Assembly: GCA_001643675.2 (NCBI GenBank)
Contig: LSRY02000078.1
Coordinates: 4,959 to 68,958, forward strand
Origin: Monocercomonoides exilis PA203
Taxonomy: Eukaryota > Protista > Preaxostyla
Reading direction: 5' to 3'
DNA length: 64,000 nt
In this document: positions 1 through 62,688 of the stretch, in pieces
How the letters are laid out: the number at the start of each line of letters is the position of its first letter
Position numbering within the stretch: position 1 is the first letter of the stretch
Notes under the pieces: generated by a model
Told to the model about the DNA's origin: nothing
Seen by the model: the letters and a program-made list of their open reading frames with translations, nothing else
Database searches by the model: none
Position numbers and translations under genes: made by a program

Positions 1-2258
1 ATTAATAGAGAGAGTTGTGAGGGAATTCAAAGATCTTTGGGTGAGGTTTTTGGAAGGGATAGTTCTTGAGAGTGTGAAGTGATGTTTAATCATTGTGTCT
101 GTCTTTTTCTTTTTGGATTTGATCTTTTGAGTCAAAGTTAGAGAACTATCAGAAAATGAAGAGTGGATGGAAAACAGAGGGAAATTAGACAAGTTTGTTT
201 TTGTACCTAAAGTTTTTTTATTTTTTTGTTTTGAATTGCCTATGACACCATGTATGTGTTGAAATATACTTTTTATTGATTTTTTATTGTTCATATGAAT
301 TGAAATTGAATTGACTGTCGGGAAATGTTTTAATGATGATATAGTTAAAATATATTCCTTTGAGAGTGATGCAACAAAAAAGAAACTTATATGATGCTTT
401 CTATATTTCAGATGATTAATACATTGAAGTGCTATTGTTATTTGTGTGTCATTTTGTTTTAAGATTGTTATCTTATTAGCAATGAATTTTTCTTTATGTT
501 TTTCTCATCACTGAATATTCATCAACCGTTGTAGTTACTCAACAATGAAGATATTGATATCAAAACAGTTATATATTGAATAGAACAATAATAAGAAACA
601 TGTTCTTTCATTAACAAAACATTTTTGAGTTTTATATTTTTCAAAGATAATTTTCTCCTTTGACATGAAAATTCAATAAAAATAAAAAAACACATTTTCA
701 CCTTTATTCAAACAACAAAAATTCAAAAATAATTTCTGATGACTTATTTGCATTAATAAAGCAATTATATTCACAAATTAAATGAAACAAAAATAAAAAA
801 TTGTCATTCATTTTTGAAATTTTTGATCATTAAAAATACAAATTATTATTAATGGCGCCATTAAGAATACCATGATCTATTTTGCTCAATGTGAATAAAT
901 AACGATAATAAACATGTCTGATGCTTTTTTGAAAATCTATTTGTGGAAAAAGTTGGTAATAATTTGTTTTTACATATTTTTTATTTGGGATGAAGTGTTG
1001 TGTGAAATGAATTGTTTCCCATGCACTGTCTTCGAAGATTTTTCTCATTATTTTACAGTTATTCGATATATTAAACATGTGAGAACGTTTGACTTATAAT
1101 GACAAAACGGCATAAAAGGTTTGGAATAAATCGTTGTTATTTTTCACAAATATAAGATTTTTGACTTATTTGTTTGAAACCAGTCTTTCTATTTGACTCA
1201 TCGACAATTTTTGATGAAACAAACAGAAAGACTATTCAATGTGACTTTTATAATTGTTTTTTATTTTTGACAAAGTTTGTTTTTATTAATTATTCACAAA
1301 ATTCTCAAAAATTAATTTTTTGCTGCTTTGAATGCATTCTGTGAAATTATTATCAAATTATCAATGTTTTTCTTTAATAGAAAGTGTATCGGAAATATGA
1401 AATGTCACAGAACAAAAGCACCGTGTGAAAGATTGAAAAGTCAAGAAAAGAACTATATAAAGTACTGGAAAAGCTCCACAGACAGTACAAGAAAGATGAA
1501 TATACACATAGAATGAAGTTTGAAACTGAAGAAGAGAATGGATCTGAAACGAATTCTGGAAAAAAATCTTTGATAAGAAAATGAAGATGAGCAAGATAAT
1601 TCTTGCCACGACGAGGAGAGATGAAGTTTGAAGAAAGTTCTATTTAAAGCGGTAGCAGAAAGCGTGAGTGTTTAAAGGAGATGGATGGAGTGAAGACGCA
1701 CCAGCAGTTCATGTGGAGCAAAAAATGTTATATGGGAGTTACGGAGCAGATATGGAAGAGGAGGAAATAAAAACATTTCAGGATTAATCGGTCTGCGTTG
1801 GATTCTTAGCTGTTTGTGTCGAATGGGGCAGATACGCTGGAGAAGAAAAATATCATACGGTCAAAGAGGATAACGATTGAAAAGAAGACACAATTCACAT
1901 CACATGAGAAGGAGTTTGGAGAAGAGGCAAAGTTGAATGCACCCAGAGCAGCAAGCCTTGCAAGAACAGCAAGTGAATACAGCAATTATTGTGGAAATTG
2001 AGTTTTTCCATTCAATGTTACCAGATTTCTCGAAGAAGAGATAAGTCAGGAAAGTTGAGATGGTGAAGGAGGCGGAGAAGATTCTTAACTCAGCGAGAGA
2101 AAAGAACAGAATTTCAGGTGGATCAATGTTGGTGATGGAGAAGATTGGAATAAATGTTTGTGTTGATTTTCTTTTTATTAAACAAACAAATATTATCAAT
2201 TTATAATAAATAATTTATTTTTATTATTATTTCATATTCTTTTTCAAATATTGAACTA

Positions 2259-2705
2259 CAGTCAAAACCGGATATAATCACATCGGTTTTTGCAGGACTT
2301 TTTGTGACTATATCCGATTGTGATTATAAGCGATGTGACTTAACACAGAAAAAAATGAAATTAAATTTTATAAATAATAAATTTTGGGTCAATTTTTTAT
2401 TTTTGAAAAACTTGTCAAATACACATTTTTCAATAGAAAAACAATTTTTTGGATTTTATTATGTTATTTAGACTTATTTTAACATTATTTTGAAAAATCG
2501 ATTTTTTGAAAATTTTGATCAAAAAACCGATTTTTCATTGAAAAAATCACCCATTATAATTTAAAATGTGATTATATATTTTCATCCCTGTGATTATATT
2601 CGATGGAAAATGAATGAAAAATAGGCCAAAAATGTCGGTGCATGGAAAAATGTGACTATAAACGAATGTGATTGTATACGACGTGATTATATCCGGTTTA
2701 GACTG
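2259..2705. mobile_element. 447-bp non-autonomous DNA transposon (MITE), Tc1/mariner superfamily, pogo/Tigger-like CAGT termini; left arm only
   Basis: TA|CAGTCAAAACCGGATATAATCAC ... GTGATTATATCCGGTTTAGACTG|TA: 23-bp TIR with 1 mismatch, TA duplicated at 2257-2258 and 2706-2707. The mirrored-coordinate sum changes from 62591 to 63040 (449 bp) across this site. Confidence 0.96.
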
Positions 2706-4871
2706 TATTTGCTTTTATTTTCCTCATTTTCCTGTGAACAGATATTCTTGATAGGGACTTATGTATTGATTTCGACGGTCATTTTGTGAATGTGCTAATT
2801 AACAATCTGCAGCTCATCGCTCACTGAACAACTTTGGAAGAAAAATCATTGAGACGCTTTATCTTTCCAGTCTGATTGGACTGGAGCAATCAATAACCAA
2901 TATGTTCTGATCAAGAAGAGATAAAGGTGCAATTTTTGACTGGATAAAGTTTGTCAAATTTTTATCAAATTGTTTTCATTGTTTTTATCATATTTCTTGT
3001 TTTTTTATTAACTAATTCAAACTCTCATTTTATATTTTTCAACAATTGATACAAAAAGATATGAGCCATAACTTTTCACGTTTTATTTCATTCATCTTCT
3101 TCTTTTGAGAATGAGAAGCTGATTCTTCCACGAACACTTCAATACATTTCTGTCGTCATTGGAGTCAGAGCTGATGAAAAAGACTGAACTAAAAAATTCA
3201 TCTTCCTTTCCCTTGCTGTTGCCTTTGTTGTCCCTGCAATGCAACTGACTGCCACCTCTCCACGCACCTTGGCTACCTCTCAAAGCATATTTTCTTCATC
3301 CCCATCGCCTTCTTCATCTTCTTCTTTCTCAGATCAACTATCCACATATTGCTTCATTTCCGCATTGTTCGAATCAGTCAAGCGCCCTTCATTCAAAGAA
3401 AACAACCTTTCATATTTCAAACAAAAGACCCCCTCCTCTTCTACTTCACCGCCAATTATCTTTTGAATTTATTTCTTCTCCATCACCCTCCAGATCTCCT
3501 TCTCCTCTTCCTCTCTCCTGCACCACTTGTCCTCTTTATTATCATCAGCTTCCACAGAAAAGATCTCTTGCCACTGATATTCTCAATGGATGGTTCATCT
3601 TCTTTGTGCAACATCACAAGCACAACCAGAGCTTCCACAAGCTTTCAATGTGTTTATTCTGGCAGATCTTGTTCATTCTTTAAGTTTATAACAACATTCT
3701 TCTTCTTCTTTGATATCCTTCTCCCACTGAAAGAATATCATACAGGAGGATACACTGCTCCACTCGCAGCATTCAATCACGTTTGATTCATTCATGCATT
3801 CTTCAATCATCCCAAATGACTCCTCATATCTTTTCCTTCATTTGAACCCCAACTGCCTACATCACTCTTCTCCCACATGCTGCAAACACAGTTCCAGAAA
3901 AATACCATTTGATTTCTATTGTTTCCATTCAGTCAACAAGTTTTCAATAACTGATGAATCATCAAAGTTCATCATTTGGGAACGACAATAGTTCAGTCCG
4001 ACTGTGAGTGTCAGGGCATACGGGTTGAGGGAGCCTTCAGTTGCATCACACCTGAACGAATGAATGAGAGGAAGAAGAAGGGGAAGAAGAGAGAGAGAGA
4101 AAGAGTAGGAAGAGAGGAACAAACATGTTATGAGTGAAATACTTTGTGGAGAAATTATGTAAAAAAACCAAAGACAGCGTTGGGAATGAAAAATTGACAG
4201 AGATTCCAAGATGCAAGAAGAGAAATGATTATTATCAAAGTTTTAAAAAAGGAAAAGAGATCAATAAAGCAGCGTGGTTGATTGAGAAAACCAGGCATAA
4301 GAAAAGACCTCCAAAAGAGGGTTATTGAAGAATCTGCTTGTGAAAAACGATTGAATACGATAGGGAAGCGCCAAAATGATGAACGTTTAAAGTTTGGAAG
4401 GGAAAACACTGAAGATGGATTTCAAACATTCTCGAGAGGTTTGTTATTATTATTTTTGATTTTCAAAATGATTCTTTTTTCGCATTCAGGATACAAAAAG
4501 AATTGGAGATCGCACGACAAAGAAGAAGATTCGACAGAAGCGACGAAAAAGGAGAATGTGAAAAGAACTAATAATGAAGAAGGTGAAGATGCAGCTTATT
4601 TCGTGCATACCTGACATTCAGCTGTTGAAAAGAACAGTTTCAGAGGAAGGATGATTTTCATGAAAAAAGGGAAGTGAAATTTGAAAATGAGGAAAGAGCA
4701 GCTTGTAAAAGAAGTTTTGCAATATGTTATAATTTTAATAGATTAATGAGGAAAGATTGAGTTGAATGAATAAAAGTATTGATGAAGATTATTTTATCTT
4801 TCCAAATAATATGCATTCACTCACTTCTATCCACTTCCACAGCTGCTGATGAAATCTTTTTCCACTCTTCC

Positions 4872-6724
4872 TTAAGATTCTCCTTCTGACAATGATCCAT
4901 TTGCATTAGACTTGTTCCTATCAACCTTCTTTTCTTCGCTGTTTCTCTTTCCAACAGCTAACGACAGATTGCAGGGAGCGAGGAGCAATCCGCTGAACGT
5001 GAGAGCCATGGTGTCAGGTGTGTGGTTGGCTTGCACGCAGTCAAGCTCAGAAATGAAAAGCAGAGAAGAGTTGTGAGAGGGGATGCCGTGGAGGGTGCAT
5101 CTGCGGTTGAGGAGCCACAAGGAGGAGACAGGGAGGAAAGCGTCGCCAGGCCAGAGGGAGGGCATGGAGGGGCTGTTGTTGGCGAACCCGTAGCGGTCGA
5201 CACGGATGCTGCTGGCAGCTGCAAAGAGTGCGCCCAGCTGTGCGCCAGAGATGTTTGTGTCTTTGAGGACAGTGGTGATGCTCTGGCAGTGGATGAGAGA
5301 GGTATTCCATTCGCAGACACTCTCTTGTGCCTCTTGTCCATATTGAACATCTGATGCATCTGGCTCAATGGTCACTCTGCGCTGTTGCTGCAGCCGTATA
5401 AGGAGTTGCTGGCGGAAGTTTGTGATGGCTGGGGAGCACCTCCATTAATTGAGCAGGCATCGAGCGTGAGTGAAGAGCAATGGGAGAACAAGGTTGCAAG
5501 CCCAAGAGCAGAGGGAGCTCCTCTCTGGGAGATGGTGCAGTTTGCGAGATGGCAGTGAAGATGGAATGCATCATAGTGAAGAAGCTTATTGACTGATTAA
5601 ACACAGTGAGATGAGAATAACAACGCTGAAACCTCCAACGGAGAGATCCATGGTGATGTGATGCTCAATAAAGTTTCTGATGTAATCGTCGAACAGGAGC
5701 ACAGGCGAGGCAACATTGAGGGCGGAGAAGTTGGCGTCGGAGAAGAAGAGGGAGGAAGCAGCGAGAGCATGATGAGCAGGGCAGGTGATGGGGGAGGGAA
5801 TGGACATACATATTGGAGAGGCAAAGGGTTCCTCGGCAAGAACAAAGGTGGGTGGAGTTGAGGTGGACGAGCTGGTAAACCGCGGAAAAGAGGAAGGAGT
5901 ACACAGCTAGTTATCCGTCGAGGAGGAAGAAGAGGGAAGAGTGGGCTGATCCAGAGGTATTTTTCTATTGAGCGGTTGATGTATAACACAGTTATGGAGA
6001 TGAAGTCGCAGGGGTAAAGCAGGTAGCTGACCTGGCGAGCAGAAAAGCCGGTGTCCTGATCGATGAACATTTAGTAGGCGCGGTAGGATGTGATGAAGGG
6101 GAGGAGGTCGACATCGAGGTTGGGGCTGGTGGGAGGAGTGGGAGGTGAAGTGGAGGTTGAAAATGAGAGAGGGAGGTGGAGTGAGTCTGAGGGAAAGGGC
6201 GCGAGGGATGGTCGGGCAGGGAGCAGCTCGAATCCGCTGAGCTCGTCGAGCGAACTGATATCGGCGCTGGGCATGTTCCAGTTGAAATGGGCTGTATCAA
6301 CCACAGCCAACACCACGTGCTCGAGGGCAAACTGCCTGGAGACATCAGCCTCCCCCAAGAACACACCGTAACCCAAGCCATGGGTCTGTGTCTGGCCTCG
6401 CTAGCCTCCTCTTGCATCGCTGCGATCTTTACACATCCCCCATCTCAGCTCCCCTTCTCCCCAACCCCAATCACACACCCGCTGCACTCGACCACGCTGC
6501 TGCTCCCAGTGCACTTTATCTGTGAAAACACTGTGCTCTCCACTTTGCCAAGGGTTTCGAACTCGCACAGCCCCAGCCTCCAAGAGCCGATTGTTATCAG
6601 CCCGAAAATTATCATCTCCACTTTCCAAAGTCATCCTTGCATCCTCAATCAGAATTGAAACTGAACCAAGCAAAGATATTGAAGTATTCAAAGGAACAAA
6701 GTCACATATCTGTCCAGCTTTCAA
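4872..6724 (-). pseudogene. Disrupted member of a large surface/beta-helix-like protein family
   Basis: Chain of minus-strand ORFs (6401..6724, 6071..6376, 5597..6070, 4872..5375) broken by stops and frameshifts. It contains a 'DLLPFITSYRAY*MFID...LLYPC' block resembling the 'LLLRVMRY..TIFV...CG...PC' block at 17646..17909. The family call is from motif recall only. Confidence 0.5.
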
Positions 6725-8184
6725 AGTGATTTGCGAAGAGGTAGAAATAGCACAGATAAGAAGATTCAGAAAAAAAGTTGAATGGAATGTTCGTCAAGCA
6801 CTTTATGCAATACAAAAAAAGGATAGGTGATGAGAAAGATGAGGTCATAATAGTTGTGAGCTTTTAAAGGAACAAAAGCAGAAATTTTCGGATATCTTTT
6901 CATATTTTTAAACAATTTTTTCTCGTAATTTTCATAAAATAACTTTTATCAATAAATTTTAAATGTGTTAAATTTTATTTGACAAATAAACCTTTATTCA
7001 AATTCTTCTCTTCATATTGAGAGATGTCACTTAATGTGACATGTCACTTCTGTGATCAAAAATGATATTCACCCCACAAACTCCATTGCAAGCTGTGCTT
7101 TCATCTTCAACTGGAACTTGTGGGCAGATGAGTGTGCTAACGAGTTCCCTAGGAAGAAGTGCATAGATTCCAACAGTTTCTTCGAGTTTTTGCACAGGAA
7201 GGATCAGAACTACTCCCTTTCCCCAGCTTGACAGATGAATCAAATTCTCAAGCAATCGTTGTGTTATATAAATCCGTTTTTGATGCTGAGCAGACAATCT
7301 CTCTGTTTGATGTCAGAATTCCGAAGTCAATTGTGGAAGATATTGCAACATGTTACAATGAACAGGATTTCAGCCCGGTATTACAAGCATCTCCTTTAGC
7401 AGATGTTTGAACTGAATATTTGTATAGAGATACATTGGATAAAGCCAGGGAACAAGATGAGAGATATCTGTTCCGTGCCTTCATAGCCATTTTATGATCG
7501 ATTCAGAATATAATGAGGAAGGCCAATTCTGCTGAGGAAGTTGCAAGAGAAGCGTTGATTCTGGGAGCACAAGCAATGCAGGAGGCAAGAAGAGAACGAA
7601 TTCATGGATAATTTGGTTTTTCAGCAGCAAGAAAAATGGAGGGCGAAGTCACTTGAGGACTGCTAACAAAGAGACATCGGGATATACTGGAAGAGACAAG
7701 AATGGTATTGAAACAAATTCAAAGAGTCGCATTTGAAAGAAAATTGGAAAGAAAAACAGATAATTATCACAGTGCAACACATCGAGAGGAGCTGTCAAGA
7801 AGTTTCTGCGAAAGACAGTTTTTCGGAGGTGGCCCCGGACGTCAGGCAGTCAGTATTGCTTCAGTAACTCCCAGAGAAGAGCAGGAGAAACTTGGAAGAT
7901 GGATGCTTCAAGACGTTCCGAGGGAGACATGAAATATTGATGGAAACCTAATAGAGGATTGGAAGCAGGACAGAGCAGTTTTGGAGGAATGGGACAAGAT
8001 CAAAATAAGAAGCTTTAAAAGACTGCGTGCACATGATGCATGAACAAACAAAAAAACAAAGGAAGCACTGAGGAAGAAATCATGGGAGGACGGAACAACG
8101 GATATGAGCATGGAACAACTATTGGATATCAGAAACGTGTTAAAAGAACAGCTGGAGACAATCATCGTCAGCGCAATACCTCCA

Positions 8185-8720
8185 GAACAGGTCATTTTTG
8201 TCAGAATGTTTTTCTTTTCATGAAGAAGTCATGCACATGGCGCCAAATCCTGGATTGCAGTTATTTGAATGCTGCAATGAAAAAGTGGCATTTCAAATGT
8301 TAAAACGAACGGAATGTGGAACGTTTGAAAGAAAAGAGGGACTTTGCGTTAACGTTGGATCTTTCCCAGTCGTTTCACTAAAAACCAACATCCGAAGACC
8401 TGAAGCCGTTTCTTTCTTTTCAGTTCGAAGAACAAGACTATGTTTTCGAAGGAATTCCCTTCGGGTTAACAGACACACCTCGGTTTTTCACAAAGATAAT
8501 GAGGAAAGTGACAGCAGCGATAAAGGAAAAATGGAAAGTCAGAGTGGATTCTCACTTGGACGATCTTATTCTGTTGCACCAAGACTGAAGCTTTCTGAAG
8601 AAAATTACAGAAGAAGTGACTCTGTTTTAAAATAGACTGGGATTGCTCATCAACAAAGAGAAATGTCATCCGAAACCAACACAGAAGTTTGTGTTCTTGA
8701 GGTTCCTTTAGAACACAAAA
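8185..8720 (+). pseudogene. DIRS reverse transcriptase domain, frameshifted
   Basis: Manual translation: VFLFMKKSCTWRQILDCSYLNAAMKKWHFK; DFALTLDLSQSFH; YVFEGIPFGLTDTPRFFTKIM from 8439; HLDDLIL at 8553 (YxDD motif); LGLLINKEKCHPKPTQKFVFL. Confidence 0.92.
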
Positions 8721-9044
8721 AAATTTACAGTACAATTGATTGAGGAAAAGCGTTCTTCTCTCCAAGAGCTGCTGAGACGTTGGGAAAAAATATTCATAAA
8801 AGCCAAACAGATTCGTGTGAAAGACTGGGCGTCAGCTATTGGGAAGTATAACACAGCTCGTTTTATCATTCCAGACGCATCCCTCCATCTCGTAACTTTG
8901 CATCACTAACTCCAAAAGAGTGTCAGAGCGATCGGATGGAAGAAGATGATGAGGATGAATTCATCAGTCCTCAAGGAGATCAGAGAATGGAGGAGGATAT
9001 TGAGATAAACCAGAAATCGGGAATTTGTTCTCGTTTTCATTCCT

Positions 9045-9420
9045 CAAGCTGTTCTGACAACAGATGCAGCCGAACGAGCATGGGGTGAAACTTTCAGAAT
9101 GAACAACAATCTTTTGGACTGGCATGTCAGGTTCTCCAATTATGACCATCGCCATTCGTCCAACTTCAGTGAACTGTCAGCTGTTTTGTTTCCCTTCTTC
9201 ATTTTTCACAGACAATTTAGCACAACAAAATATCCCATCTGCAACTCCGATCAGACAACAGTTCAGTAGTTTTCAATGTGAATCGTTGTAACGCGAGTAA
9301 GAATCTTCGACCAGTTTTTCACAAGATAAGGAACTGGACAGAAGCGAGGAATTTGTGAATGAGAGCACAACATCTTCCAGGAAGGAAGAATCACATATCA
9401 GATTAACTATCTCGGCTGGA
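9045..9420 (+). pseudogene. DIRS RNase H domain
   Basis: LTTDAAERAWG (Asp at 9063), SSNFSELSAV, LRSDNSSVVFNVNR (SDN at 9251), AQHLPGRKNHISD*LSR. Confidence 0.92.
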
Positions 9421-9481
9421 AAGGGAATGGAACAACGAGATCGGAGACAATTTACTCAGACAAATACTTGCTCGATGGAAA

Positions 9482-9784
9482 GTGAGACCGACTTTCGATG
9501 CTTTTGCTTTGACACATAATCACAAAGTGAAAAGATGGTGCGGTATGGGCAGTCCTATTGACAAAGACGGATTGACAGTTCCGTGGAGCTATGGGTTTGT
9601 TCTGGTCCATACTCCGATTCCTCTGATTCCGAAGGTCATACGAAAGGCTCAGATGGAGAAAGTTCAAGCGATCACACTCCTACCGAGCTGGAAGGTTCAG
9701 AATTGGGACATCCTTCTTCAAACGAGCAATTATTACAGCTTGGAATTGAATTACAGCTCCAAGATTCTTCGAGAGTGGACATAG
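9482..9784 (+). pseudogene. DIRS methyltransferase-like (phage Dam/N6A-type) domain
   Basis: PTFDAFALTHNHK...DGLTVPWS...VHTPIPLIPKVIRK...LLPSWKVQNW follows the DxFA..N / W / xPP / PxW..QxW pattern of DIRS1 MT domains and lies directly after RNase H. Confidence 0.8.
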
Positions 9785-9859
9785 ATGAAGAAAACGGGAG
9801 CCTGTTTCCATCCATGGAAAATGAAAGTGATCCTGCTGAATCCATTAAGGAGAGAGGAG

Positions 9860-14050: not shown

Positions 14051-14224
14051 CAACTGAGCTGAGAGTCTTCAACGTCAGCTGCTGAACGGATGATGGAATG
14101 CTTTGTTATGCATTGTGTTTTTGGGATTCTCTTCAAATGATCATATGAATCTGTGTTTAAAGAATAAGCCTAAGAACTTGATGAAGACAAAAAGGTTTGC
14201 ATCTGAAGAAGATAACTGGAATTT

Positions 14225-17081: not shown

Positions 17082-17107
17082 AAAAAAAAAAAAAAAAAAA
17101 AAAAAAA
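17082..17107. repeat. Poly(A) tract, A26; T24 at 45952..45975 in the right arm
   Basis: Direct read of the sequence. Confidence 0.95.
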
Positions 17108-18545: not shown

Positions 18546-18760
18546 GGAGCTTCTTTTCTAATATTGTCTTTTCCTCCTATTCTTCCTCTTCCTCTTCCTC
18601 TTCTTCTTCCTCTTCCTCCTCTTCCATTTCTTCCTCTTCCTCCTCTTCTTCTTACTCTTCTCCTTCTCCTCTTTCTTCTCCTTCTGATTCATTATGCATT
18701 CCAATTTTAGACCTTTTCATATCTATTTGTTCAAAACAACATTTCCTTCTTCTTCTTCTT

Positions 18761-23919: not shown

Positions 23920-23920
<1 letters not shown>

Positions 23921-24010: not shown

Positions 24011-24011
<1 letters not shown>

Positions 24012-39012: not shown

Positions 39013-39154
<142 letters not shown>

Positions 39155-51400: not shown

Positions 51401-51670
51401 AGGCATCCATGATAAACAAATAAATAATAATTTCCAAATGCTTTCTTGACTTAAATTCCGACAGTGACCGGTAGTAACGAAAGTGCCGCGGTATTTACAC
51501 CGCAAAAAAAGATCACGACTCAACCCAATGTTCATGAAAAAATTGAAAATGAACAGTTGAAAAATCGATTATAATAATAATAAATTCCAAAGTTATCAAA
51601 AATTAATTGTAAATAAAATTTAATAATTGCCTGTGTTGACTTTTTTTGTCAAAAAATAATACTTTTAATA

Positions 51671-54600
51671 TGAGTGAAGTAATTTATTCCGTCACGTCAC
51701 TTCACTCAAAAATGTTCACGTCAGAAGGCATGTGACGAAGATGTTTAGTAAATTTATGTTTAAAACACTTTGATACCAAAATAAGGTCTATTAATTAGAA
51801 AAATAACGAACATTCAATTTCTTCTCTTCTCATTGAGAGAAAAACTTAATTTGTGGTTGTTGCTTTGCCCTTTGGACTTCTATCGAAAGAGCGGAAATCA
51901 CATGTCTTGGATTCTCTTTTGGCTTGTGCCCTTGTGCGAATAATGAAAATGTCATTTTCTTCTTCTTGTCTGTTCTGTTCAACATTCAATTCATCTCTTG
52001 TTCTATCATCGTCTCCTAGAGTTTGCAACTTCTTTCCTTTTGTCCTTTTCCTCCTGACAGTCTTCGTTTTCACCTCTTCCACTAACTTCTCCATGGAAGC
52101 ATCCACTTCTTCACTCTTTAATTCCTCTTCTGAAAGAGTTCTTTCATTGGCTTGTTCTCTTTTGCTTCATCTTCAACACTTGCTTTTGGACATTCTTCGT
52201 TCTCCTCGTCAGTAAACTTTTGTTCTTTCATTGTTCCAACAATAACTCGTGTTATTAACGATACAAAATTTATCCTGAAATAGTGCTAAACAAAAGTATT
52301 TATATTCTGTAAAACCCTTGCGTACTTGGCAAACTGTGAAGGAAGGATTCTTGCTATTGTTAATGGAGACAAGGTTGCTTCCTTAAAAGAGAACGGCTTG
52401 AATCCCTGAAAAACTCCTGTAAGCTTCATTGCCTTCGAAGCCAGCTTACGGATTCCGGATGCTGTTAGAGGTTAGAACGATGTGGAATTGTGCAAGTTTG
52501 TTGCTGTTCTGCTTATGTTTGACCAGGAAATACAACTCTTTTATTGTTGAAGCTGGTCATTTTTATGGGAGTTCCGGAAGAAAATGAACTACAATCTCTG
52601 ATCGTGTTTGTAATGTCTTTAATGCTGCATCCAAATAGACACGCTCTTCTTCTTCCCGAGAGTCCTCCATGCTTATCCTCTCCAGTTTTGAAAATCTGCA
52701 ACAGAGAAGAACATTGTCAACGTTATGAATTTCATTGTTCCTTCTTTGAAAGATAACAAATTGTTAGTGCCTAACTCAGTGTAGTATTTTAACAAAACAT
52801 TCGGATTCATAATGTCAGGCGCAAGTTTCTTCATCGACTTGTCTGTTAAACGAAAGACACGAAACAGAATCCGAATGATTGCAATGTCTCCCCAAACGGT
52901 TTTAAAAACAAGAACTGAGTAAAAAAATTCAGCGGCTCTCACCATCTGTATAACTGAAACCTTGAATCCTCTATTCTTCATCGTTAAAAATACATCCGCA
53001 CATTTGACGGTCCAGTCCGGTGAGTTGTCTGGAATATGTCCATGGGCACACTTCTTCCATTGGTCTGAAAAGTGCGGAAAATAGAATAAATATCCATCCC
53101 ATGTTGTCCTTGCAATTCCAGCCTTGCACTCCTCTGCGAGCTCCAAGGGGATATTTCTTTCATGAAGCGCGTGCATCCACCAGGCTTCTCCTCTCTCCTT
53201 AATGGATTCAGCAGGATCACTTTCATTTTCCATGGATGGAAACAGGCTCCCGTTTTCTTCATCTATGTCCACTCTCGAAGAATCTTGGAGCTGTAATTCA
53301 ATTCCAAGCTGTAATAATTGCTCGTTTGAAGAAGGATGTCCCAATTCTGAACCTTCCAGCTCGGTAGGAGTGTGATCGCTTGAACTTTCTCCATCTGAGC
53401 CTTTCGTATGACCTTCGGAATCAGAGGAATCGGAGTATGGACCAGAACAAACCCATAGCTCCACGGAACTGTCAATCCGTCTTTGTCAATAGGACTGCCC
53501 ATACCGCACCATCTTTTCACTTTGTGATTATGTGTCAAAGCAAAAGCATCGAAAGTCGGTCTCACTTTCCATCGAGCAAGTATTTGTCTGAGTAAATTGT
53601 CTCCGATCTCGTTGTTCCATTCCCTTTCCAGCCGAGATAGTTAATCTGATATGTGATTCTTCCTTCCTGGAAGATGTTGTGCTCTCATTCACAAATTCCT
53701 CGCTTCTGTCCAGTTCCTTATCTTGTGAAAAACTGGTCGAAGATTCTTACTCGCGTTACAACGATTCACATTGAAAACTACTGAACTGTTGTCTGATCGG
53801 AGTTGCAGATGGGATATTTTGTTGTGCTAAATTGTCTGTGAAAAATGAAGAAGGGAAACAAAACAGCTGACAGTTCACTGAAGTTGGACGAATGGCGATG
53901 GTCATAATTGGAGAACCTGACATGCCAGTCCAAAAGATTGTTGTTCATTCTGAAAGTTTCACCCCATGCTCGTTCGGCTGCATCTGTTGTCAGAACAGCT
54001 TGAGGAATGAAAACGAGAACAAATTCCCGATTTCTGGTTTATCTCAATATCCTCCTCCATTCTCTGATCTCCTTGAGGACTGATGAATTCATCCTCATCA
54101 TCTTCTTCCATCCGATCGCTCTGACACTCTTTTGGAGTTAGTGATGCAAAGTTACGAGATGGAGGGATGCGTCTGGAATGATAAAACGAGCTGTGTTATA
54201 CTTCCCAATAGCTGACGCCCAGTCTTTCACACGAATCTGTTTGGCTTTTATGAATATTTTTCCCAACGTCTCAGCAGCTCTTGGAGAGAAGAACGCTTTT
54301 CCTCAATCAATTGTACTGTAAATTTTTTTGTGTTCTAAAGGAACCTCAAGAACACAAACTTCTGTGTTGGTTTCGGATGACATTTCTCTTTGTTGATGAG
54401 CAATCCCAGTCTATTTTAAAACAGAGTCACTTCTTCTGTAATTTTCTTCAGAAAGCTTCAGTCTTGGTGCAACAGAATAAGATCGTCCAAGTGAGAATCC
54501 ACTCTGACTTTCCATTTTTCCTTTATCGCTGCTGTCACTTTCCTCATTATCTTTGTGAAAAACCGAGGTGTGTCTGTTAACCCGAAAAGAATTCCTTCGA

Positions 54601-56027
54601 AAACATAGTCTTGTTCTTCGAACTGAAAAGAAAGAAACGGCTTCAGGTCTTCGGATGTTGGTTTTTAGTGAAACGACTGGGAAAGATCCAACGTTAACGC
54701 AAAGTCCCTCTTTTCTTTCAAACGTTCCACATTCCGTTCGTTTTAACATTTGAAATGCCACTTTTTCATTGCAGCATTCAAATAACTGCAATCCAGGATT
54801 TGGCGCCATGTGCATGACTTCTTCATGAAAAGAAAAACATTCTGACAAAAATGACCTGTTCTGGAGGTATTGCGCTGACGATGATTGTCTCCAGCTGTTC
54901 TTTTAACACGTTTCTGATATCCAATAGTTGTTCCATGCTCATATCCGTTGTTCCGTCCTCCCATGATTTCTTCCTCAGTGCTTCCTTTGTTTTTTTGTTT
55001 GTTCATGCATCATGTGCACGCAGTCTTTTAAAGCTTCTTATTTTGATCTTGTCCCATTCCTCCAAAACTGCTCTGTCCTGCTTCCAATCCTCTATTAGGT
55101 TTCCATCAATATTTCATGTCTCCCTCGGAACGTCTTGAAGCATCCATCTTCCAAGTTTCTCCTGCTCTTCTCTGGGAGTTACTGAAGCAATACTGACTGC
55201 CTGACGTCCGGGGCCACCTCCGAAAAACTGTCTTTCGCAGAAACTTCTTGACAGCTCCTCTCGATGTGTTGCACTGTGATAATTATCTGTTTTTCTTTCC
55301 AATTTTCTTTCAAATGCGACTCTTTGAATTTGTTTCAATACCATTCTTGTCTCTTCCAGTATATCCCGATGTCTCTTTGTTAGCAGTCCTCAAGTGACTT
55401 CGCCCTCCATTTTCTTGCTGCTGAAAAACCAAATTATCCATGAATTCGTTCTCTTCTTGCCTCCTGCATTGCTTGTGCTCCCAGAATCAACGCTTCTCTT
55501 GCAACTTCCTCAGCAGAATTGGCCTTCCTCATTATATTCTGAATCGATCATAAAATGGCTATGAAGGCACGGAACAGATATCTCTCATCTTGTTCCCTGG
55601 CTTTATCCAATGTATCTCTATACAAATATTCAGTTCAAACATCTGCTAAAGGAGATGCTTGTAATACCGGGCTGAAATCCTGTTCATTGTAACATGTTGC
55701 AATATCTTCCACAATTGACTTCGGAATTCTGACATCAAACAGAGAGATTGTCTGCTCAGCATCAAAAACGGATTTATATAACACAACGATTGCTTGAGAA
55801 TTTGATTCATCTGTCAAGCTGGGGAAAGGGAGTAGTTCTGATCCTTCCTGTGCAAAAACTCGAAGAAACTGTTGGAATCTATGCACTTCTTCCTAGGGAA
55901 CTCGTTAGCACACTCATCTGCCCACAAGTTCCAGTTGAAGATGAAAGCACAGCTTGCAATGGAGTTTGTGGGGTGAATATCATTTTTGATCACAGAAGTG
56001 ACATGTCACATTAAGTGACATCTCTCA
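51671..56027 (-). mobile_element. Mirror copy of the DIRS1-like element
   Basis: Reverse complement of 7018..11380. The RT motif IPFG reads ILFG here because of a CC>TT change. Confidence 0.9.
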
Positions 56028-56318
56028 ATATGAAGAGAAGAATTTGAATAAAGGTTTATTTGTCAAATAAAATTTAACACATTTAAAATTTATTGATAAA
56101 AGTTATTTTATGAAAATTACGAGAAAAATTGTTTAAAAATATGAAAAGATATCCGAAAATTTCTGCTTTTGTTCCTTTAAAAGCTCACAACTATTATGAC
56201 CTCATCTTTCTCATCACCTATCCTTTTTTGTATTGCATAAAGTGCTTGACGAACATTCCATTCAACTTTTTTTCTGAATCTTCTTATCTGTGCTATTTCT
56301 ACCTCTTCGCAAATCACT

Positions 56319-58167
56319 TTGAAAGCTGGACAGATATGTGACTTTGTTCCTTTGAATACTTCAATATCTTTGCTTGGTTCAGTTTCAATTCTGATTGAGG
56401 ATGCAAGGATGACTTTGGAAAGTGGAGATGATAATTTTCTTGCTGATAACAATCGGCTTTTGGAGGGTTGTTCTGTGCGAGTTCGAAACCCTTGGCAAAG
56501 TGTCGAGCAATGTTTTCACAGATAAAGTGCACCGGAAGCAGCAGCGTGGTGGAGTGCAGTGTGTGTGTGATTGGGGTTGGGGAGAAGGGGAGCTGAGATG
56601 GGGGATGTGTAAAGATCGCAGCGATGCAGAGGAGGCTAGCGAGGCCAGACACAGACCCATGGCTTGGGTTACGGTGTGTTCTTGGGGAGGCTGATGTCTC
56701 CAGGCAGTTTGCCCTCGAGCACGTGGTGTTGGCTGTGGTTGATACAGCCCATTTCAACTGGAACATGCCCAGCGCCGATATCAGTTCGCTCGACGAGCTC
56801 AGCGGATTCGAGCTGCTCCCTGCCCGACCATCCCTCGCGCCCTTTCCCTCAGACTCACTCCACCTCCCTCTCTCATTTTCAACCTCCACTTCACCTCCCA
56901 CTCCTCCCACCAGCCCCAACCTCGATGTCGACCTCCTCCCCTTCATCACATCCTACCGCGCCTACTAAATGTTCATCGATCAGGACACCGGCTTTTCTGC
57001 TCGCCAGGTCAGCTACCTGCTTTACCCCTGCGACTTCATCTCCATAACTGTGTTATACATCAACCGCTCAATAGAAAAATACCTCTGGATCAGCCCACTC
57101 TTCCCTCTTCTTCCTCCTCGACGGATAACTAGCTGTGTACTCCTTCCTCTTTTCCGCGGTTTACCAGCTCGTCCACCTCAACTCCACCCACCTTTGTTCT
57201 TGCCGAGGAACCCTTTGCCTCTCCAATATGTATGTCCATTCCCTCCCCCATCACCTGCCCTGCTCATCATGCTCTCGCTGCTTCCTCCCTCTTCTTCTCC
57301 GACGCCAACTTCTCCGCCCTCAATGTTGCCTCGCCTGTGCTCCTGTTCGACGATTACATCAGAAACTTTATTGAGCATCACATCACCATGGATCTCTCCG
57401 TTGGAGGTTTCAGCGTTGTTATTCTCATCTCACTGTGTTTAATCAGTCAATAAGCTTCTTCACTATGATGCATTCCATCTTCACTGCCATCTCGCAAACT
57501 GCACCATCTCCCAGAGAGGAGCTCCCTCTGCTCTTGGGCTTGCAACCTTGTTCTCCCATTGCTCTTCACTCACGCTCGATGCCTGCTCAATTAATGGAGG
57601 TGCTCCCCAGCCATCACAAACTTCCGCCAGCAACTCCTTATACGGCTGCAGCAACAGCGCAGAGTGACCATTGAGCCAGATGCATCAGATGTTCAATATG
57701 GACAAGAGGCACAAGAGAGTGTCTGCGAATGGAATACCTCTCTCATCCACTGCCAGAGCATCACCACTGTCCTCAAAGACACAAACATCTCTGGCGCACA
57801 GCTGGGCGCATTCTTTGCAGCTGCCAGCAGCATCCGTGTCGACCGCTACGGGTTCGCCAACAACAGCCCCTCCATGCCCTCCCTCTGGCCTGGCGACGCT
57901 TTCCTCCCTGTCTCCTCCTTGTGGCTCCTCAACCGCAGATGCACCCTCCACGGCATCCCCTCTCACAACTCTTCTCTGCTTTTCATTTCTGAGCTTGACT
58001 GCGTGCAAGCCAACCACACACCTGACACCATGGCTCTCACGTTCAGCGGATTGCTCCTCGCTCCCTGCAATCTGTCGTTAGCTGTTGGAAAGAGAAACAG
58101 CGAAGAAAAGAAGGTTGATAGGAACAAGTCTAATGCAAATGGATCATTGTCAGAAGGAGAATCTTAA
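56319..58167 (+). pseudogene. Mirror copy of the 4872..6724 pseudogene, with a locally divergent patch
   Basis: ORFs 56319..56525, 56624..56968, 56969..57442 and 57664..58167 mirror the left-arm set. Confidence 0.5.
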
Positions 58168-60332
58168 GGAAGAGTGGAAAAAGATTTCATCAGCAGCTGT
58201 GGAAGTGGATAGAAGTGAGTGAATGCATATTATTTGGAAAGATAAAATAATCTTCATCAATACTTTTATTCATTCAACTCAATCTTTCCTCATTAATCTA
58301 TTAAAATTATAACATATTGCAAAACTTCTTTTATAAGCTGCTCTTTCCTCATTTTCAAATTTCACTTCCCTTTTTTCATGAAAATCATCCTTCCTCTGAA
58401 ACTGTTCTTTTCAACAGCTGAATGTCAGGTATGCACGAAATAAGCTGCATCTTCACCTTCTTCATTATTAGTTCTTTTCACATTCTCCTTTTTCGTCGCT
58501 TCTGTCGAATCTTCTTCTTTGTCGTGCGATCTCCAATTCTTTTTGTATCCTGAATGCGAAAAAAGAATCATTTTGAAAATCAAAAATAATAATAACAAAC
58601 CTCTCGAGAATGTTTGAAATCCATCTTCAGTGTTTTCCCTTCCAAACTTTAAACGTTCATCATTTTGGCGCTTCCCTATCGTATTCAATCGTTTTTCACA
58701 AGCAGATTCTTCAATAACCCTCTTTTTGGAGGTCTTTTCTTATGCCTGGTTTTCTCAATCAACCACGCTGCTTTATTGATCTCTTTTCCTTTTTTAAAAC
58801 TTTGATAATAATCATTTCTCTTCTTGCATCTTGGAATCTCTGTCAATTTTTCATTCCCAACGCTGTCTTTGGTTTTTTTACATAATTTCTCCACAAAGTA
58901 TTTCACTCATAACATGTTTGTTCCTCTCTTCCTACTCTTTCTCTCTCTCTCTTCTTCCCCTTCTTCTTCCTCTCATTCATTCGTTCAGGTGTGATGCAAC
59001 TGAAGGCTCCCTCAACCCGTATGCCCTGACACTCACAGTCGGACTGAACTATTGTCGTTCCCAAATGATGAACTTTGATGATTCATCAGTTATTGAAAAC
59101 TTGTTGACTGAATGGAAACAATAGAAATCAAATGGTATTTTTCTGGAACTGTGTTTGCAGCATGTGGGAGAAGAGTGATGTAGGCAGTTGGGGTTCAAAT
59201 GAAGGAAAAGATATGAGGAGTCATTTGGGATGATTGAAGAATGCATGAATGAATCAAACGTGATTGAATGCTGCGAGTGGAGCAGTGTATCCTCCTGTAT
59301 GATATTCTTTCAGTGGGAGAAGGATATCAAAGAAGAAGAAGAATGTTGTTATAAACTTAAAGAATGAACAAGATCTGCCAGAATAAACACATTGAAAGCT
59401 TGTGGAAGCTCTGGTTGTGCTTGTGATGTTGCACAAAGAAGATGAACCATCCATTGAGAATATCAGTGGCAAGAGATCTTTTCTGTGGAAGCTGATGATA
59501 ATAAAGAGGACAAGTGGTGCAGGAGAGAGGAAGAGGAGAAGGAGATCTGGAGGGTGATGGAGAAGAAATAAATTCAAAAGATAATTGGCGGTGAAGTAGA
59601 AGAGGAGGGGGTCTTTTGTTTGAAATATGAAAGGTTGTTTTCTTTGAATGAAGGGCGCTTGACTGATTCGAACAATGCGGAAATGAAGCAATATGTGGAT
59701 AGTTGATCTGAGAAAGAAGAAGATGAAGAAGGCGATGGGGATGAAGAAAATATGCTTTGAGAGGTAGCCAAGGTGCGTGGAGAGGTGGCAGTCAGTTGCA
59801 TTGCAGGGACAACAAAGGCAACAGCAAGGGAAAGGAAGATGAATTTTTTAGTTCAGTCTTTTTCATCAGCTCTGACTCCAATGACGACAGAAATGTATTG
59901 AAGTGTTCGTGGAAGAATCAGCTTCTCATTCTCAAAAGAAGAAGATGAATGAAATAAAACGTGAAAAGTTATGGCTCATATCTTTTTGTATCAATTGTTG
60001 AAAAATATAAAATGAGAGTTTGAATTAGTTAATAAAAAAACAAGAAATATGATAAAAACAATGAAAACAATTTGATAAAAATTTGACAAACTTTATCCAG
60101 TCAAAAATTGCACCTTTATCTCTTCTTGATCAGAACATATTGGTTATTGATTGCTCCAGTCCAATCAGACTGGAAAGATAAAGCGTCTCAATGATTTTTC
60201 TTCCAAAGTTGTTCAGTGAGCGATGAGCTGCAGATTGTTAATTAGCACATTCACAAAATGACCGTCGAAATCAATACATAAGTCCCTATCAAGAATATCT
60301 GTTCACAGGAAAATGAGGAAAATAAAAGCAAA

Positions 60333-60334
60333 TA
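60333..60334. other. Empty TA target site of the MITE in the right arm
   Basis: GCAAA-TA-GTTCAA is the reverse complement of TTGAAC-TA-TTTGC, i.e. the two left-arm flanks joined by a single TA with no footprint. Confidence 0.95.
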
Positions 60335-62688
60335 GTTCAATATTTGAAAAAGAATATGAAATAATAATAAAAATAAATTATTTATTATAAATTGATAATA
60401 TTTGTTTGTTTAATAAAAAGAAAATCAACACAAACATTTATTCCAATCTTCTCCATCACCAACATTGATCCACCTGAAATTCTGTTCTTTTCTCTCGCTG
60501 AGTTAAGAATCTTCTCCGCCTCCTTCACCATCTCAACTTTCCTGACTTATCTCTTCTTCGAGAAATCTGGTAACATTGAATGGAAAAACTCAATTTCCAC
60601 AATAATTGCTGTATTCACTTGCTGTTCTTGCAAGGCTTGCTGCTCTGGGTGCATTCAACTTTGCCTCTTCTCCAAACTCCTTCTCATGTGATATGAATTG
60701 TGTCTTCTTTTCAATCGTTATCCTCTTTGACCGTATGATATTTTTCTTCTCCAGCGTATCTGCCCCATTCGACACAAACAGCTAAGAATCCAACGCAGAC
60801 CGATTAATCCTGAAATGTTTTTATTTCCTCCTCTTCCATATCTGCTCCGTAACTCCCATATAACATTTTTTGCTCCACATGAACTGCTGGTGCGTCTTCA
60901 CTCCATCCATCTCCTTTAAACACTCACGCTTTCTGCTACCGCTTTAAATAGAACTTTCTTCAAACTTCATCTCTCCTCGTCGTGTCAAGAATTATCTTGC
61001 TCATCTTCATTTTCTTATCAAAGATTTTTTTCCAGAATTCGTTTCAGATCCATTCTCTTCTTCAGTTTCAAACTTCATTCTATGTGTATATTCATCTTTC
61101 TTGTACTGTCTGTGGAGCTTTTCCAGTACTTTATATAGTTCTTTTCTTGACTTTTCAATCTTTCACACGGTGCTTTTGTTCTGTGACATTTCATATTTCC
61201 GATACACTTTCTATTAAAGAAAAACATTGATAATTTGATAATAATTTCACAGAATGCATTCAAAGCAGCAAAAAATTAATTTTGAGAATTTTGTGAATAA
61301 TTAATAAAAACAAACTTTGTCAAAAATAAAAAACAATTATAAAAGTCACATTGAATAGTCTTTCTGTTTGTTTCATCAAAAATTGTCGATGAGTCAAATA
61401 GAAAGACTGGTTTCAAACAAATAAGTCAAAAATCTTATATTTGTGAAAAATAACAACGATTTATTCCAAACCTTTTATGCCGTTTTGTCATTATAAGTCA
61501 AACGTTCTCACATGTTTAATATATCGAATAACTGTAAAATAATGAGAAAAATCTTCGAAGACAGTGCATGGGAAACAATTCATTTCACACAACACTTCAT
61601 CCCAAATAAAAAATATGTAAAAACAAATTATTACCAACTTTTTCCACAAATAGATTTTCAAAAAAAGCATCAGACATGTTTATTATCGTTATTTATTCAC
61701 ATTGAGCAAAATAGATCATGGTATTCTTAATGGCGCCATTAATAATAATTTGTATTTTTAATGATCAAAAATTTCAAAAATGAATGACAATTTTTTATTT
61801 TTGTTTCATTTAATTTGTGAATATAATTGCTTTATTAATGCAAATAAGTCATCAGAAATTATTTTTGAATTTTTGTTGTTTGAATAAAGGTGAAAATGTG
61901 TTTTTTTATTTTTATTGAATTTTCATGTCAAAGGAGAAAATTATCTTTGAAAAATATAAAACTCAAAAATGTTTTGTTAATGAAAGAACATGTTTCTTAT
62001 TATTGTTCTATTCAATATATAACTGTTTTGATATCAATATCTTCATTGTTGAGTAACTACAACGGTTGATGAATATTCAGTGATGAGAAAAACATAAAGA
62101 AAAATTCATTGCTAATAAGATAACAATCTTAAAACAAAATGACACACAAATAACAATAGCACTTCAATGTATTAATCATCTGAAATATAGAAAGCATCAT
62201 ATAAGTTTCTTTTTTGTTGCATCACTCTCAAAGGAATATATTTTAACTATATCATCATTAAAACATTTCCCGACAGTCAATTCAATTTCAATTCATATGA
62301 ACAATAAAAAATCAATAAAAAGTATATTTCAACACATACATGGTGTCATAGGCAATTCAAAACAAAAAAAATAAAAAACTTTAGGTACAAAAACAAACTT
62401 GTCTAATTTCCCTCTGTTTTCCATCCACTCTTCATTTTCTGATAGTTCTCTAACTTTGACTCAAAAGATCAAATCCAAAAAGAAAAAAGACAGACACAAT
62501 GATTAAACATCACTTCACACTCTCAAGAACTATCCCTTCCAAAAACCTCACCCAAAGATCTTTGAATTCCCTCACAACTCTCTCTATTAATGAATCTCTA
62601 TAAATACAAATATAAACGGGACAATAACAAAGAAATAAATAGGGACATTATAGGGACAAAAAGCACAAGAAAACAATCGGATTCTAAC

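What the first reader, a model, noticed from the sequence alone, without database searches (positions are those of the whole stretch)
1..62591. Giant palindrome of at least 62.6 kb (two ~31-kb arms, 50-bp spacer) whose arms have diverged
Seen: the window up to 62591 is self-complementary about 31490..31539, duplicating a retrotransposon, a GTPase gene and several pseudogenes. Known: such fold-backs arise in vivo (breakage-fusion-bridge, palindromic amplification, isochromosomes) and also as artefacts of whole-genome amplification or fold-back long reads. Seen: the arms differ by a clean 449-bp transposon insertion, non-homopolymer SNPs (near 1606, 1898, 4704, 5228, 8458-8459, 19215, 20118, 20538, 20837, 31133), a dense divergent patch and microsatellite lengths. 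Inference: a single-molecule fold-back cannot create a TSD-flanked insertion. So this is either a real near-perfect palindrome that has persisted long enough to gain a transposon, or two haplotypes or paralogous segments joined head-to-head by the assembler.
Basis: partly seen in the sequence, partly recalled or inferred. Interest (0 to 1): 0.85.

Follow-up and report, generated by a model that had tools for sequence, protein, structure and literature searches.

The report
Real 63-kb palindrome joining two contigs
The mirror-image 63-kb stretch is most likely a real inverted duplication inside one chromosome of the protist Monocercomonoides exilis, grown from a small pre-existing inverted repeat by fold-back repair; it is a known kind of rearrangement, and it shows that three separate assembly contigs are one 1.55-Mb chromosome.

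Summary
Window 1-31489 and 31540-62591 are reverse complements (99.5-99.7%) around the 50-bp asymmetric spacer 31490-31539. Near-identity runs on to window 62842, about 31.5 kb per arm.

The window is almost all of a 68,958-bp contig (C78) of the M. exilis ONT/Canu assembly. C78 is redundant. Its left arm equals the end of C59, which starts with a telomere. Its right arm equals the start of C31, which ends with a telomere. All three contigs cross the spacer. Beyond the arms the flanks are unrelated. The join gives a chromosome of about 1.547 Mb.

Substitutions and the TA-flanked 447-bp MITE are arm-specific and repeat in the independent contigs. Most indel and microsatellite "divergence" does not repeat and is ONT noise.

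A 97% paralog at C31:76850-84238 has the identical spacer but only a ~385-440-bp inverted repeat. It shares the left/right asymmetry at 31134/31892. The right arm switches to left-arm sequence within 14 nt after that site.

Best reading: fold-back priming from a short inverted repeat, closed distally inside inverted transposon copies.

Short-read contigs did not cover the spacer, so direct read proof is missing. The "retrotransposon" was not confirmed. Other unchecked scan notes report giant palindromes elsewhere in this genome. This is a new member of a known kind.

The parts
1..31489 (+). Left arm of the palindrome, inferred to be the ancestral copy. It continues about 250 bp left of the window to C78:4707. 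It equals the end of contig C59 (435852-472593).
31490..31539 (+). 50-bp non-palindromic spacer (axis). It is identical in sequence and orientation to the spacer of the paralog at C31:83772-83821.
31540..62842 (-). Right arm, inferred to be the derived copy. It equals the start of contig C31 (1 to about 31.6 kb). It lacks the MITE.
31105..31905 (.). Ancestral short inverted repeat (arms of about 385 bp plus the spacer), shared with the paralog at C31:83385-84210. The right arm changes from ancestral right-arm sequence to a copy of the left arm between 31892 and 31906.
31134..31134 (+). Asymmetric site with partner 31892. The left and right alleles differ in the same way in the paralog's short inverted repeat.
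2259..2705 (+). 447-bp Tc1/mariner-like MITE with TA target-site duplication, found only in the left arm (also in C59:443057-443507). The empty site is at 60333-60334.
6413..6634 (.). Dense divergent patch (mirror at about 56410-56627). C31 carries about 42 differences and C78-right a subset of 14, which points to a blended consensus. It lies in a family of at least 30 copies, so ectopic gene conversion is likely.
62843..64000 (-). Diverged outer homology (93-97%) inside a multi-copy DNA-transposon-like element whose left copy encodes an 824-aa UCH/USP-domain ORF (C78:2250-4724). This is the inferred distal junction zone. The element's inner end is near window 62120.
25772..26500 (-). GTPase (MMR_HSR1) ORF, duplicated in mirror image in the right arm. 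It is part of a ~7-kb unit (about 24575-31958) that recurs on the same chromosome.

Best explanation
A real inverted duplication (palindrome) sits inside one chromosome of Monocercomonoides exilis PA203. It has two arms of about 31.5 kb around a 50-bp spacer. The chromosome reads telomere - C59 - left arm - spacer - right arm - C31 - telomere, about 1.547 Mb. Contig C78, which holds the window, is a redundant bridging contig that Canu built because the arms are longer than the reads. Inferred origin: the ancestral locus had only a short inverted repeat (arms of about 385-440 bp and the same 50-bp spacer) next to the 7-kb GTPase-containing unit. A break distal to it was resected. The 3' strand folded back on the short repeat by intramolecular annealing. 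The non-homologous tail was clipped at the end of the homology, about 355-367 nt from the spacer. Synthesis then copied the left arm outward for about 31 kb. The event was closed by homology between the newly copied transposon end and a resident inverted copy of the same transposon family on the C31 side. This kept the distal chromosome arm and its telomere. Afterwards the left arm gained a MITE, the right arm gained a ~230-bp ectopic conversion patch, and about 9 isolated substitutions accumulated (about 0.03%). Shown here: the structure, the linkage of each arm to its flank, and the paralog with the short repeat and the shared asymmetry. Inferred: the break, the fold-back, the direction of copying and the distal recombination.
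For: Structure. C78:2-36782 matches C59:435852-472593 at 99.25%. C78:36226-68958 matches C31:1-32812 at 99.36%. C59's end and C31's start each cross the spacer by about 250-300 bp. C31 and reverse-complemented C59 lose all homology beyond about 34 kb. Telomeres: C59 starts with (CCCTAA)n and C31 ends with (TTAGGG)n, in the orientation needed for one chromosome. The joined size lies within the 0.86-2.54 Mb reported for complete chromosomes. Not a read artefact: reads were sheared to about 20 kb with N50 8.9 kb and no amplification, whereas the contig is 69 kb. The MITE and 23 substitutions follow the pattern C78L=C59 and C78R=C31. Only four full copies of the arm interior exist in the assembly, and there is no A-IR-Z contig at 99%. 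Precursor: C31:76850-84238 is 97% identical to 6.9 kb of the left arm plus the spacer plus about 440 bp of the other arm. Its spacer is letter-identical. At the site 353-356 nt from the spacer, palL=parL=T and palR=parR=A. Fourteen nt further out palR follows the left-arm sequence while parR diverges. Independent library: short-read contig X1 record 4 (31876-32080, 0 differences) carries the right allele together with left-type sequence beyond the short repeat. Distal end: identity steps from 100% to 97.5%, then 93-95%, then about 70% inside two inverted copies of a multi-copy element. Mechanistic precedent: inverted repeats with short spacers near a break form fold-backs by intramolecular annealing and channel repair into BIR (PMC6103520).
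Against: No short-read contig was laid on 31316-31715, the spacer plus or minus 200 bp, which is rich in GAA repeats. Adjacency of the two arms therefore rests on ONT contigs only. No read can span a whole arm, so the path from the MITE to the axis depends on Canu's phasing across SNP gaps of about 10-11 kb. Depth could not be normalised to single-copy sequence. The shared-asymmetry argument rests on one substitution plus the spacer orientation. The paralog could instead be a later asymmetric copy of the palindrome centre. Which arm is older and how the distal end was closed are inferences. The claim that Canu uses each read in only one contig is from my knowledge of the program and was not tested.
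Confidence: 0.7

Rival explanations
1. Assembler mis-join. C59's end and C31's start are two real inverted paralogous segments at separate loci, each ending in the short inverted repeat followed by other sequence. Canu joined them head to head through the shared ~0.8-kb repeat and made C78.
For: The short repeat is a real repeated unit that could confuse overlaps. No independent short-read contig covers the axis. Canu was run with corMinCoverage=0, which keeps poorly supported reads. Canu misassemblies from chimeric ONT reads are documented (PMC7500977).
Against: Reads of 9-20 kb easily span a 0.8-kb repeat. Both large contigs stop 250-300 bp past the spacer instead of running into another flank. 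No contig holds an alternative continuation at 99% or more. The short-read contig at 31876-32080 shows arm-type sequence directly beyond the short repeat on the right side, together with the right allele. Telomere orientation fits a single chromosome.
Confidence: 0.1
2. An old palindrome kept nearly identical by arm-to-arm gene conversion, as in sex-chromosome palindromes. On this reading the C31:76.8-84.2 kb segment is a later asymmetric copy of its centre and not a precursor-like state.
For: Substitution identity is about 99.97% with a decaying outer edge. The arms still differ by a MITE and a conversion patch, so they are not brand new. The paralog is 3% diverged, so under this reading the palindrome is older than 3% divergence.
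Against: Conversion strong enough to hold 31 kb at 99.97% over the time needed for 3% divergence should also have erased the single asymmetry 353 nt from the axis, yet both loci keep it. The paralog's right arm fades gradually into low-complexity similarity, with no sharp duplication breakpoint.
Confidence: 0.12
3. Library or sequencing fold-back artefact (template-complement ONT reads or snap-back molecules), or two haplotypes of one locus fused by the assembler.
For: Fold-back reads are a known ONT artefact. Most arm differences are error-like indels.
Against: The contig is 69 kb while fragments are about 20 kb. The MITE sits in one arm only, with a clean empty site in the other. Substitution haplotypes are reproducible. 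The flanks are unrelated and each ends in its own telomere. The spacer is genomic and not adapter sequence, because it recurs in the paralog.
Confidence: 0.03
4. Two separate, perfectly symmetric palindromic (isochromosome-like) molecules, X-A-s-A'-X' and Y'-A-s-A'-Y. Their centres were mixed into the asymmetric contig C78.
For: No read spans from the axis to the MITE, so arm pairing across the axis is fixed only by the 31134/31892 site.
Against: C78 is L-type on the left and R-type on the right at a pair of sites only 758 bp apart, which any axis-crossing read covers. This reading needs two dicentric-like chromosomes. The same asymmetry in the paralog explains the pattern more simply.
Confidence: 0.04

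Closest known systems
Large palindromes or inverted duplications initiated by a short inverted repeat next to a double-strand break (intramolecular annealing / fold-back priming followed by BIR). Studied in yeast (PMC6103520) and, from my own knowledge, in Tetrahymena rDNA and mammalian gene amplification.
   Same: The axis is a short non-palindromic spacer flanked by a pre-existing short inverted repeat. The derived arm keeps the ancestral repeat sequence up to the end of the homology and then becomes a copy of the other arm. The distal end is resolved through a dispersed repeat.
   Different: This is a fixed, natural, stable monocentric-looking product in a wild protist genome, with both telomeres retained. 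It is not an induced or tumour rearrangement. There is no sign of further amplification or breakage-fusion-bridge cycles. The break and the proteins involved are unobserved.
Ampliconic palindromes of mammalian sex chromosomes (P1-P8 type), maintained by arm-to-arm gene conversion (from my own knowledge).
   Same: Tens of kilobases per arm, at least 99.9% substitution identity, and an outer boundary where identity decays.
   Different: The spacer is 50 bp instead of kilobases. The arms are gene-poor and repeat-rich. No evidence for ongoing conversion could be obtained. The preserved asymmetry near the axis argues for youth and against long maintenance.
Origin-dependent inverted-repeat amplification (ODIRA; PMC4689423).
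   Same: Short inverted repeats lie at an inversion junction, and a replication- or repair-based origin is plausible.
   Different: ODIRA gives an interstitial inverted triplication with two inverted junctions. Here only two high-identity copies exist.
Chimeric or fold-back long-read artefacts that produce false contigs in Canu assemblies (PMC7500977).
   Same: A small contig made wholly of a palindrome, with error-like indels between its arms.
   Different: The contig is far longer than the reads. It carries arm-specific MITE and SNP haplotypes and distinct telomere-bearing flanks, and its spacer is found elsewhere in the genome.

Membership tests
Short-inverted-repeat-primed fold-back inverted duplication | Two long arms in inverted orientation around a short non-palindromic spacer | tested here: met
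   arms of about 31.5 kb, 50-bp spacer at 31490-31539
Short-inverted-repeat-primed fold-back inverted duplication | A short inverted repeat with the same spacer existed before the large palindrome | tested here: met
   the 97% paralog at C31:83385-84210 has the identical spacer and arms of only about 385-440 bp. Precedence is inferred from the shared asymmetry and was not dated.
Short-inverted-repeat-primed fold-back inverted duplication | The derived arm keeps ancestral right-repeat sequence up to the end of the homology, then copies the other arm | tested here: met
   palR=parR at 31892, and palR=palL from 31906 outward where parR diverges. This rests on one informative site.
Short-inverted-repeat-primed fold-back inverted duplication | Distal end resolved by telomere addition, a second junction or homologous recombination in a dispersed repeat | tested here: inconclusive
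   identity steps down inside inverted copies of a multi-copy element. A hybrid element is plausible, but no donor was shown.
Short-inverted-repeat-primed fold-back inverted duplication | Loss or replacement of the sequence originally distal to the short repeat | not testable with these tools
   This needs an outgroup strain or species with the ancestral locus.
Long-read fold-back / chimeric-read assembly artefact | Arms derive from one duplex, so they differ only by random read errors | tested here: not met
   MITE with TA duplication in one arm, and 23 reproducible arm-specific substitutions
Long-read fold-back / chimeric-read assembly artefact | The structure is no longer than one or two reads and has no independent linkage to unique flanks | tested here: not met
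   69-kb contig against ~20-kb fragments. The arms continue into C59 and C31 with different flanks and telomeres.
Long-read fold-back / chimeric-read assembly artefact | The junction is absent from independent libraries | tested here: inconclusive
   no short-read contig covers the spacer itself (31316-31715 uncovered). Recombinant words specific to the right arm at 31876-32080 are present in run X1.
Gene-conversion-maintained ampliconic palindrome | Arm identity of at least 99.9% | tested here: met
   9 isolated substitutions in about 29 kb outside one patch
Gene-conversion-maintained ampliconic palindrome | Evidence of continuing arm-to-arm conversion (arms more alike within a lineage than orthologous arms between lineages) | not testable with these tools

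The most novel reading that the evidence does not exclude
This locus may be the clearest before-and-after example of a recurrent process in M. exilis. On this reading, short inverted-repeat units repeatedly seed fold-back repair that builds giant palindromes, and this is a major route of segmental duplication and gene-family growth in this oxymonad. Other unchecked notes of the scan report many 18-60-kb palindromes centred on small inverted-repeat elements.
Probability: 0.25. Interest if true: 0.65.

Novelty: new member of a known kind. Interest (0 to 1): 0.45.

Why it matters
Three things follow if this is right. (1) The published assembly can be improved. C59 and C31 join into a telomere-to-telomere chromosome of about 1.547 Mb. 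C78 is redundant, and the locus is represented four times where the genome has two copies. That redundancy also explains why Pilon left homopolymer errors there. (2) It is a natural, fixed example of a short-inverted-repeat fold-back duplication in which a precursor-like paralog survives beside the product. The priming point can therefore be read to within about 14 nt. Such resolution is usually available only in engineered yeast or tumour junctions. (3) Neither the assembly paper nor any paper found mentions palindromes in Monocercomonoides. If the many other palindromes noted in this genome have the same anatomy, fold-back repair would be a notable shaper of oxymonad genomes.

Tried and rejected
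Read evidence. The axis could not be confirmed or refuted, and depth could not be normalised because no single-copy reference stretch could be laid.

Exact-protein look-up of the ORF crossing the spacer (31471-31905) found nothing.

Fetching the putative donor of the dense patch, and more of C59 and C31, failed.

A 'P/Q' nested inverted-repeat family near the axis was considered because many loci matched on both strands. It was rejected because those matches are GAA/CTT low-complexity sequence.

A SMRTbell or ONT adapter at the spacer was considered from memory. No resemblance was seen, and the spacer's identity with the paralog makes the question moot.

Haplotig reading: rejected because C31 and C59 share nothing beyond about 34 kb.

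Retrotransposon: 27 ORFs of at least 110 aa were scanned against Pfam without any reverse-transcriptase hit. Shorter or broken ORFs were not searched.

ODIRA: rejected because there is no third high-identity copy.

Full report
**1. Observation**

The window is self-complementary. blastn of the left half against the right half gives 1-2258 <-> 62591-60333 (99.69%) and 2706-31504 <-> 60334-31525 (99.50%). The symmetry axis is the asymmetric 50-bp stretch 31490-31539. The only large interruption is a 447-bp insert at 2259-2705. It has terminal inverted repeats (CAGTC...GACTG) and a TA duplication. The right arm shows the clean empty site at 60333-60334. The insert belongs to a MITE family with at least 40 full-length copies at 84-96% identity.

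**2. Where the window lies**

The window is G000:C78:4959-68958, and contig C78 is only 68,958 bp, so the contig is essentially the palindrome. The genome has 82,301,135 bp in 101 contigs. These figures match the ONT assembly of Monocercomonoides exilis PA203. That assembly used:
- unamplified HMW DNA sheared to about 20 kb
- the LSK108 ligation kit, read N50 8.9 kb, 12.9 Gb of data
- Canu 1.8 with corMinCoverage=0
- Nanopolish followed by ten rounds of Pilon (PMC8767320)

An earlier scan note suggesting an oxymonad gave the lead to the organism.

**3. C78 is redundant with two large contigs**

- C78:2-36782 equals C59:435852-472593, the last 36.7 kb of a 472,593-bp contig, at 99.25%.
- C78:36226-68958 equals C31:1-32812, the first 32.8 kb of a 1,074,681-bp contig, at 99.36%.
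- C59's end and C31's start each run about 250-300 bp past the spacer.
- C31 and reverse-complemented C59 are about 99.4% identical for 29.1 kb and about 100% for a further 2.4 kb beyond the MITE site. Identity then falls to 97.5%, then 93-95%, then about 70%, and there is no homology beyond about 34 kb.

The two arms therefore sit next to different unique sequence, which rules out haplotigs. C59 begins with (CCCTAA)n and C31 ends with (TTAGGG)n. Joined through the palindrome in the orientation given by C78, they form a molecule of about 1.547 Mb with correctly oriented telomeres. This lies within the 0.86-2.54 Mb range of the complete chromosomes. Arm-interior sequence occurs exactly four times in the assembly: C78 twice, C59 once and C31 once.

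**4. Which differences between the arms are real**

I aligned four versions of the arm (C78-left, C59, C78-right, C31).
- 23 of the inner substitutions follow the pattern C78L=C59 and C78R=C31. Contig-private substitutions are few outside one patch.
- The reproducible isolated sites are 4705, 5228, 8458, 8459, 19215, 20118, 20538, 20838 and 31134. That is about 0.03% divergence.
- Only 6 of 97 indel bins are arm-specific. The 20-bp ATAG-microsatellite difference is private to C78-right.
- Short-read contigs bring the G-run at 30579/32441 to one length in both arms.

The indel and microsatellite "divergence" is therefore uncorrected ONT noise. This is expected where a region is present four times in the assembly and short reads map ambiguously; that explanation is my inference.

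The dense patch is real but larger than it looks in the window. C31 has about 42 differences from the left type over 6413-6634, and C78-right has a subset of 14, which looks like a blended consensus. The patch lies in a repeat family with at least 30 copies at 75-83%. Ectopic gene conversion into the right arm is the likely cause. The donor could not be fetched.

**5. The axis is genuine genomic sequence and has a short-form relative**

C31:76850-84238 matches C78:29533-36916 at 97.0%. That span is 6.9 kb of the left arm, the spacer, and about 440 bp of the other arm. Its spacer (C31:83772-83821) is letter for letter the same 50 bp as in the window, in the same orientation relative to the long side.

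I read all four arms outward from the spacer.
- They are almost identical for about 355 nt.
- At the site corresponding to window 31134/31892, the two left arms carry T and the two right arms carry A.
- Fourteen nt further out (window 31906), the paralog's right arm starts to diverge and decays into unrelated sequence.
- From that point the palindrome's right arm follows the left-arm sequence for the next 31 kb.

The full short repeat with spacer exists only at these two loci. The left/right asymmetry therefore predates the split of the two loci. The giant right arm is a copy of the left arm, grafted onto the ancestral right repeat at the end of the short homology.

**6. Mechanism (inferred)**

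This anatomy is what fold-back repair predicts.
- A break occurs distal to a short inverted repeat and is resected.
- The two repeat arms anneal within one strand.
- The non-homologous 3' tail is removed.
- Synthesis copies the other arm outward.

In yeast, inverted repeats with short spacers near a break form such fold-backs and channel repair into BIR (PMC6103520).

The distal end lies inside a multi-copy element. Its left copy has an intact 824-aa ORF with a UCH/USP domain (C78:2250-4724). Near-identity between the arms stops at C78:4707 / window 62843, within this element. Outward of that point, the C59 and C31 copies belong to different subfamilies. The simplest reading is that the newly copied element end recombined with a resident inverted copy on the C31 side. 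That would have retained the distal arm and its telomere. The MITE, the patch and the about 9 substitutions came later. That number of substitutions is far more than a few decades in culture could give, by my rough estimate from typical mutation rates. The structure is therefore a natural feature of the strain.

**7. Why not an artefact**

A single-duplex fold-back read cannot carry a TSD-flanked MITE in one arm, reproducible SNP haplotypes, or two different telomere-bearing flanks. It also cannot be 69 kb when fragments are about 20 kb.

An assembler mis-join through the 0.8-kb short repeat is unlikely for three reasons.
- Reads span the repeat easily.
- No alternative continuation exists at 99% or more.
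- Both big contigs end symmetrically just past the axis, which I would expect when reads beyond the axis duplicate reads already placed (my knowledge of Canu, not tested).

In run X1, a short-read contig covers 31876-32080 without a single difference. It combines the right allele at 31892 with left-type sequence beyond the short repeat. That word combination is unique to the giant right arm.

Weaknesses:
- No short-read contig was laid on 31316-31715.
- Depth could not be normalised.
- No read can span an arm.
- The precedence argument rests on one site plus the spacer orientation.

I put the reality of the palindrome at about 0.85, and the whole statement including the fold-back origin at about 0.7.

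**8. Comparison and novelty**

The structure works like the short-inverted-repeat-initiated palindromes of yeast, Tetrahymena rDNA and amplified mammalian loci. It resembles sex-chromosome palindromes in arm identity. It differs from ODIRA products, which are triplications (PMC4689423), and from chimeric-read contigs (PMC7500977).

Neither the assembly paper nor any other paper in the library mentions palindromes in Monocercomonoides. Unchecked notes of this scan report many other giant palindromes in this genome, some said to be centred on small inverted-repeat units. I could not test them.

Verdict: a real but ordinary kind of rearrangement, and a new member of a known kind. It has an unusually legible origin and a practical consequence for the assembly.

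**9. Content of the arms**

The arms are gene-poor.
- Only 7 ORFs of at least 180 aa occur in 31.5 kb.
- One ORF is a GTPase (MMR_HSR1, 25772-26500 minus strand).
- Several segments belong to dispersed repeat families.
- The inner ~7-kb unit recurs on the same chromosome at C31:76850-83822 (97%), C59:326078-331392 (89%) and C59:381408-383564 (99.5%, GTPase part).
- No reverse-transcriptase domain was found in 27 ORFs.

Noticed in passing
whole contig C78 (window 1-64000 plus L009): C78 is fully redundant with the end of C59 and the start of C31. C59 (telomere at its start) and C31 (telomere at its end) overlap by about 557 bp across the axis and would join into a telomere-to-telomere chromosome of about 1.547 Mb.
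   Followed up: yes
L009:2250-4724 (C78), mirror in L013:1629-3444 (C31): A multi-copy element (at least 40 copies at about 88%) with an intact 824-aa ORF that carries an N-terminal UCH/USP deubiquitinase domain. The C31 copy has the ORF split (327 + 261 aa), and its outer 1.3 kb belongs to another subfamily.
   Followed up: partly
window 24575-31958; L026-L027 (C31:76850-84238); L030-L031 (C59:325401-331392); L032 (C59:381408-383564): A ~7-kb unit containing the GTPase gene and ending in the short inverted repeat recurs on the same chromosome at 97%, 89% and (GTPase part only) 99.5% identity. Two copies share a left boundary near window 24575-24616, so it may be a discrete mobile or segmentally duplicated unit.
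   Followed up: partly
window 6413-6634 and mirror at about 56410-56627: The C78-right consensus is intermediate between the left type and the C31 type (14 of about 42 differences). This suggests that reads of both arms were blended in the redundant contig.
   Followed up: partly
L009:1-1980 and C59:434373-437801 (L015): A tandem array of about 3.4 kb of CAT/CAC-type triplets lies just outside the left arm. C78 starts inside it.
   Followed up: no
window 30557-31072 (mirror 31954-32466): Short-read contigs in all four runs show a form in which about 514 bp are skipped or replaced by 30 other letters, at lower depth than the arms. It is probably another paralog of this segment.
   Followed up: no
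window 34339: All four short-read runs insert one A here. The same homopolymer error seems to be present in both arms, so it is a residual assembly error in a region that Pilon could not polish.
   Followed up: no
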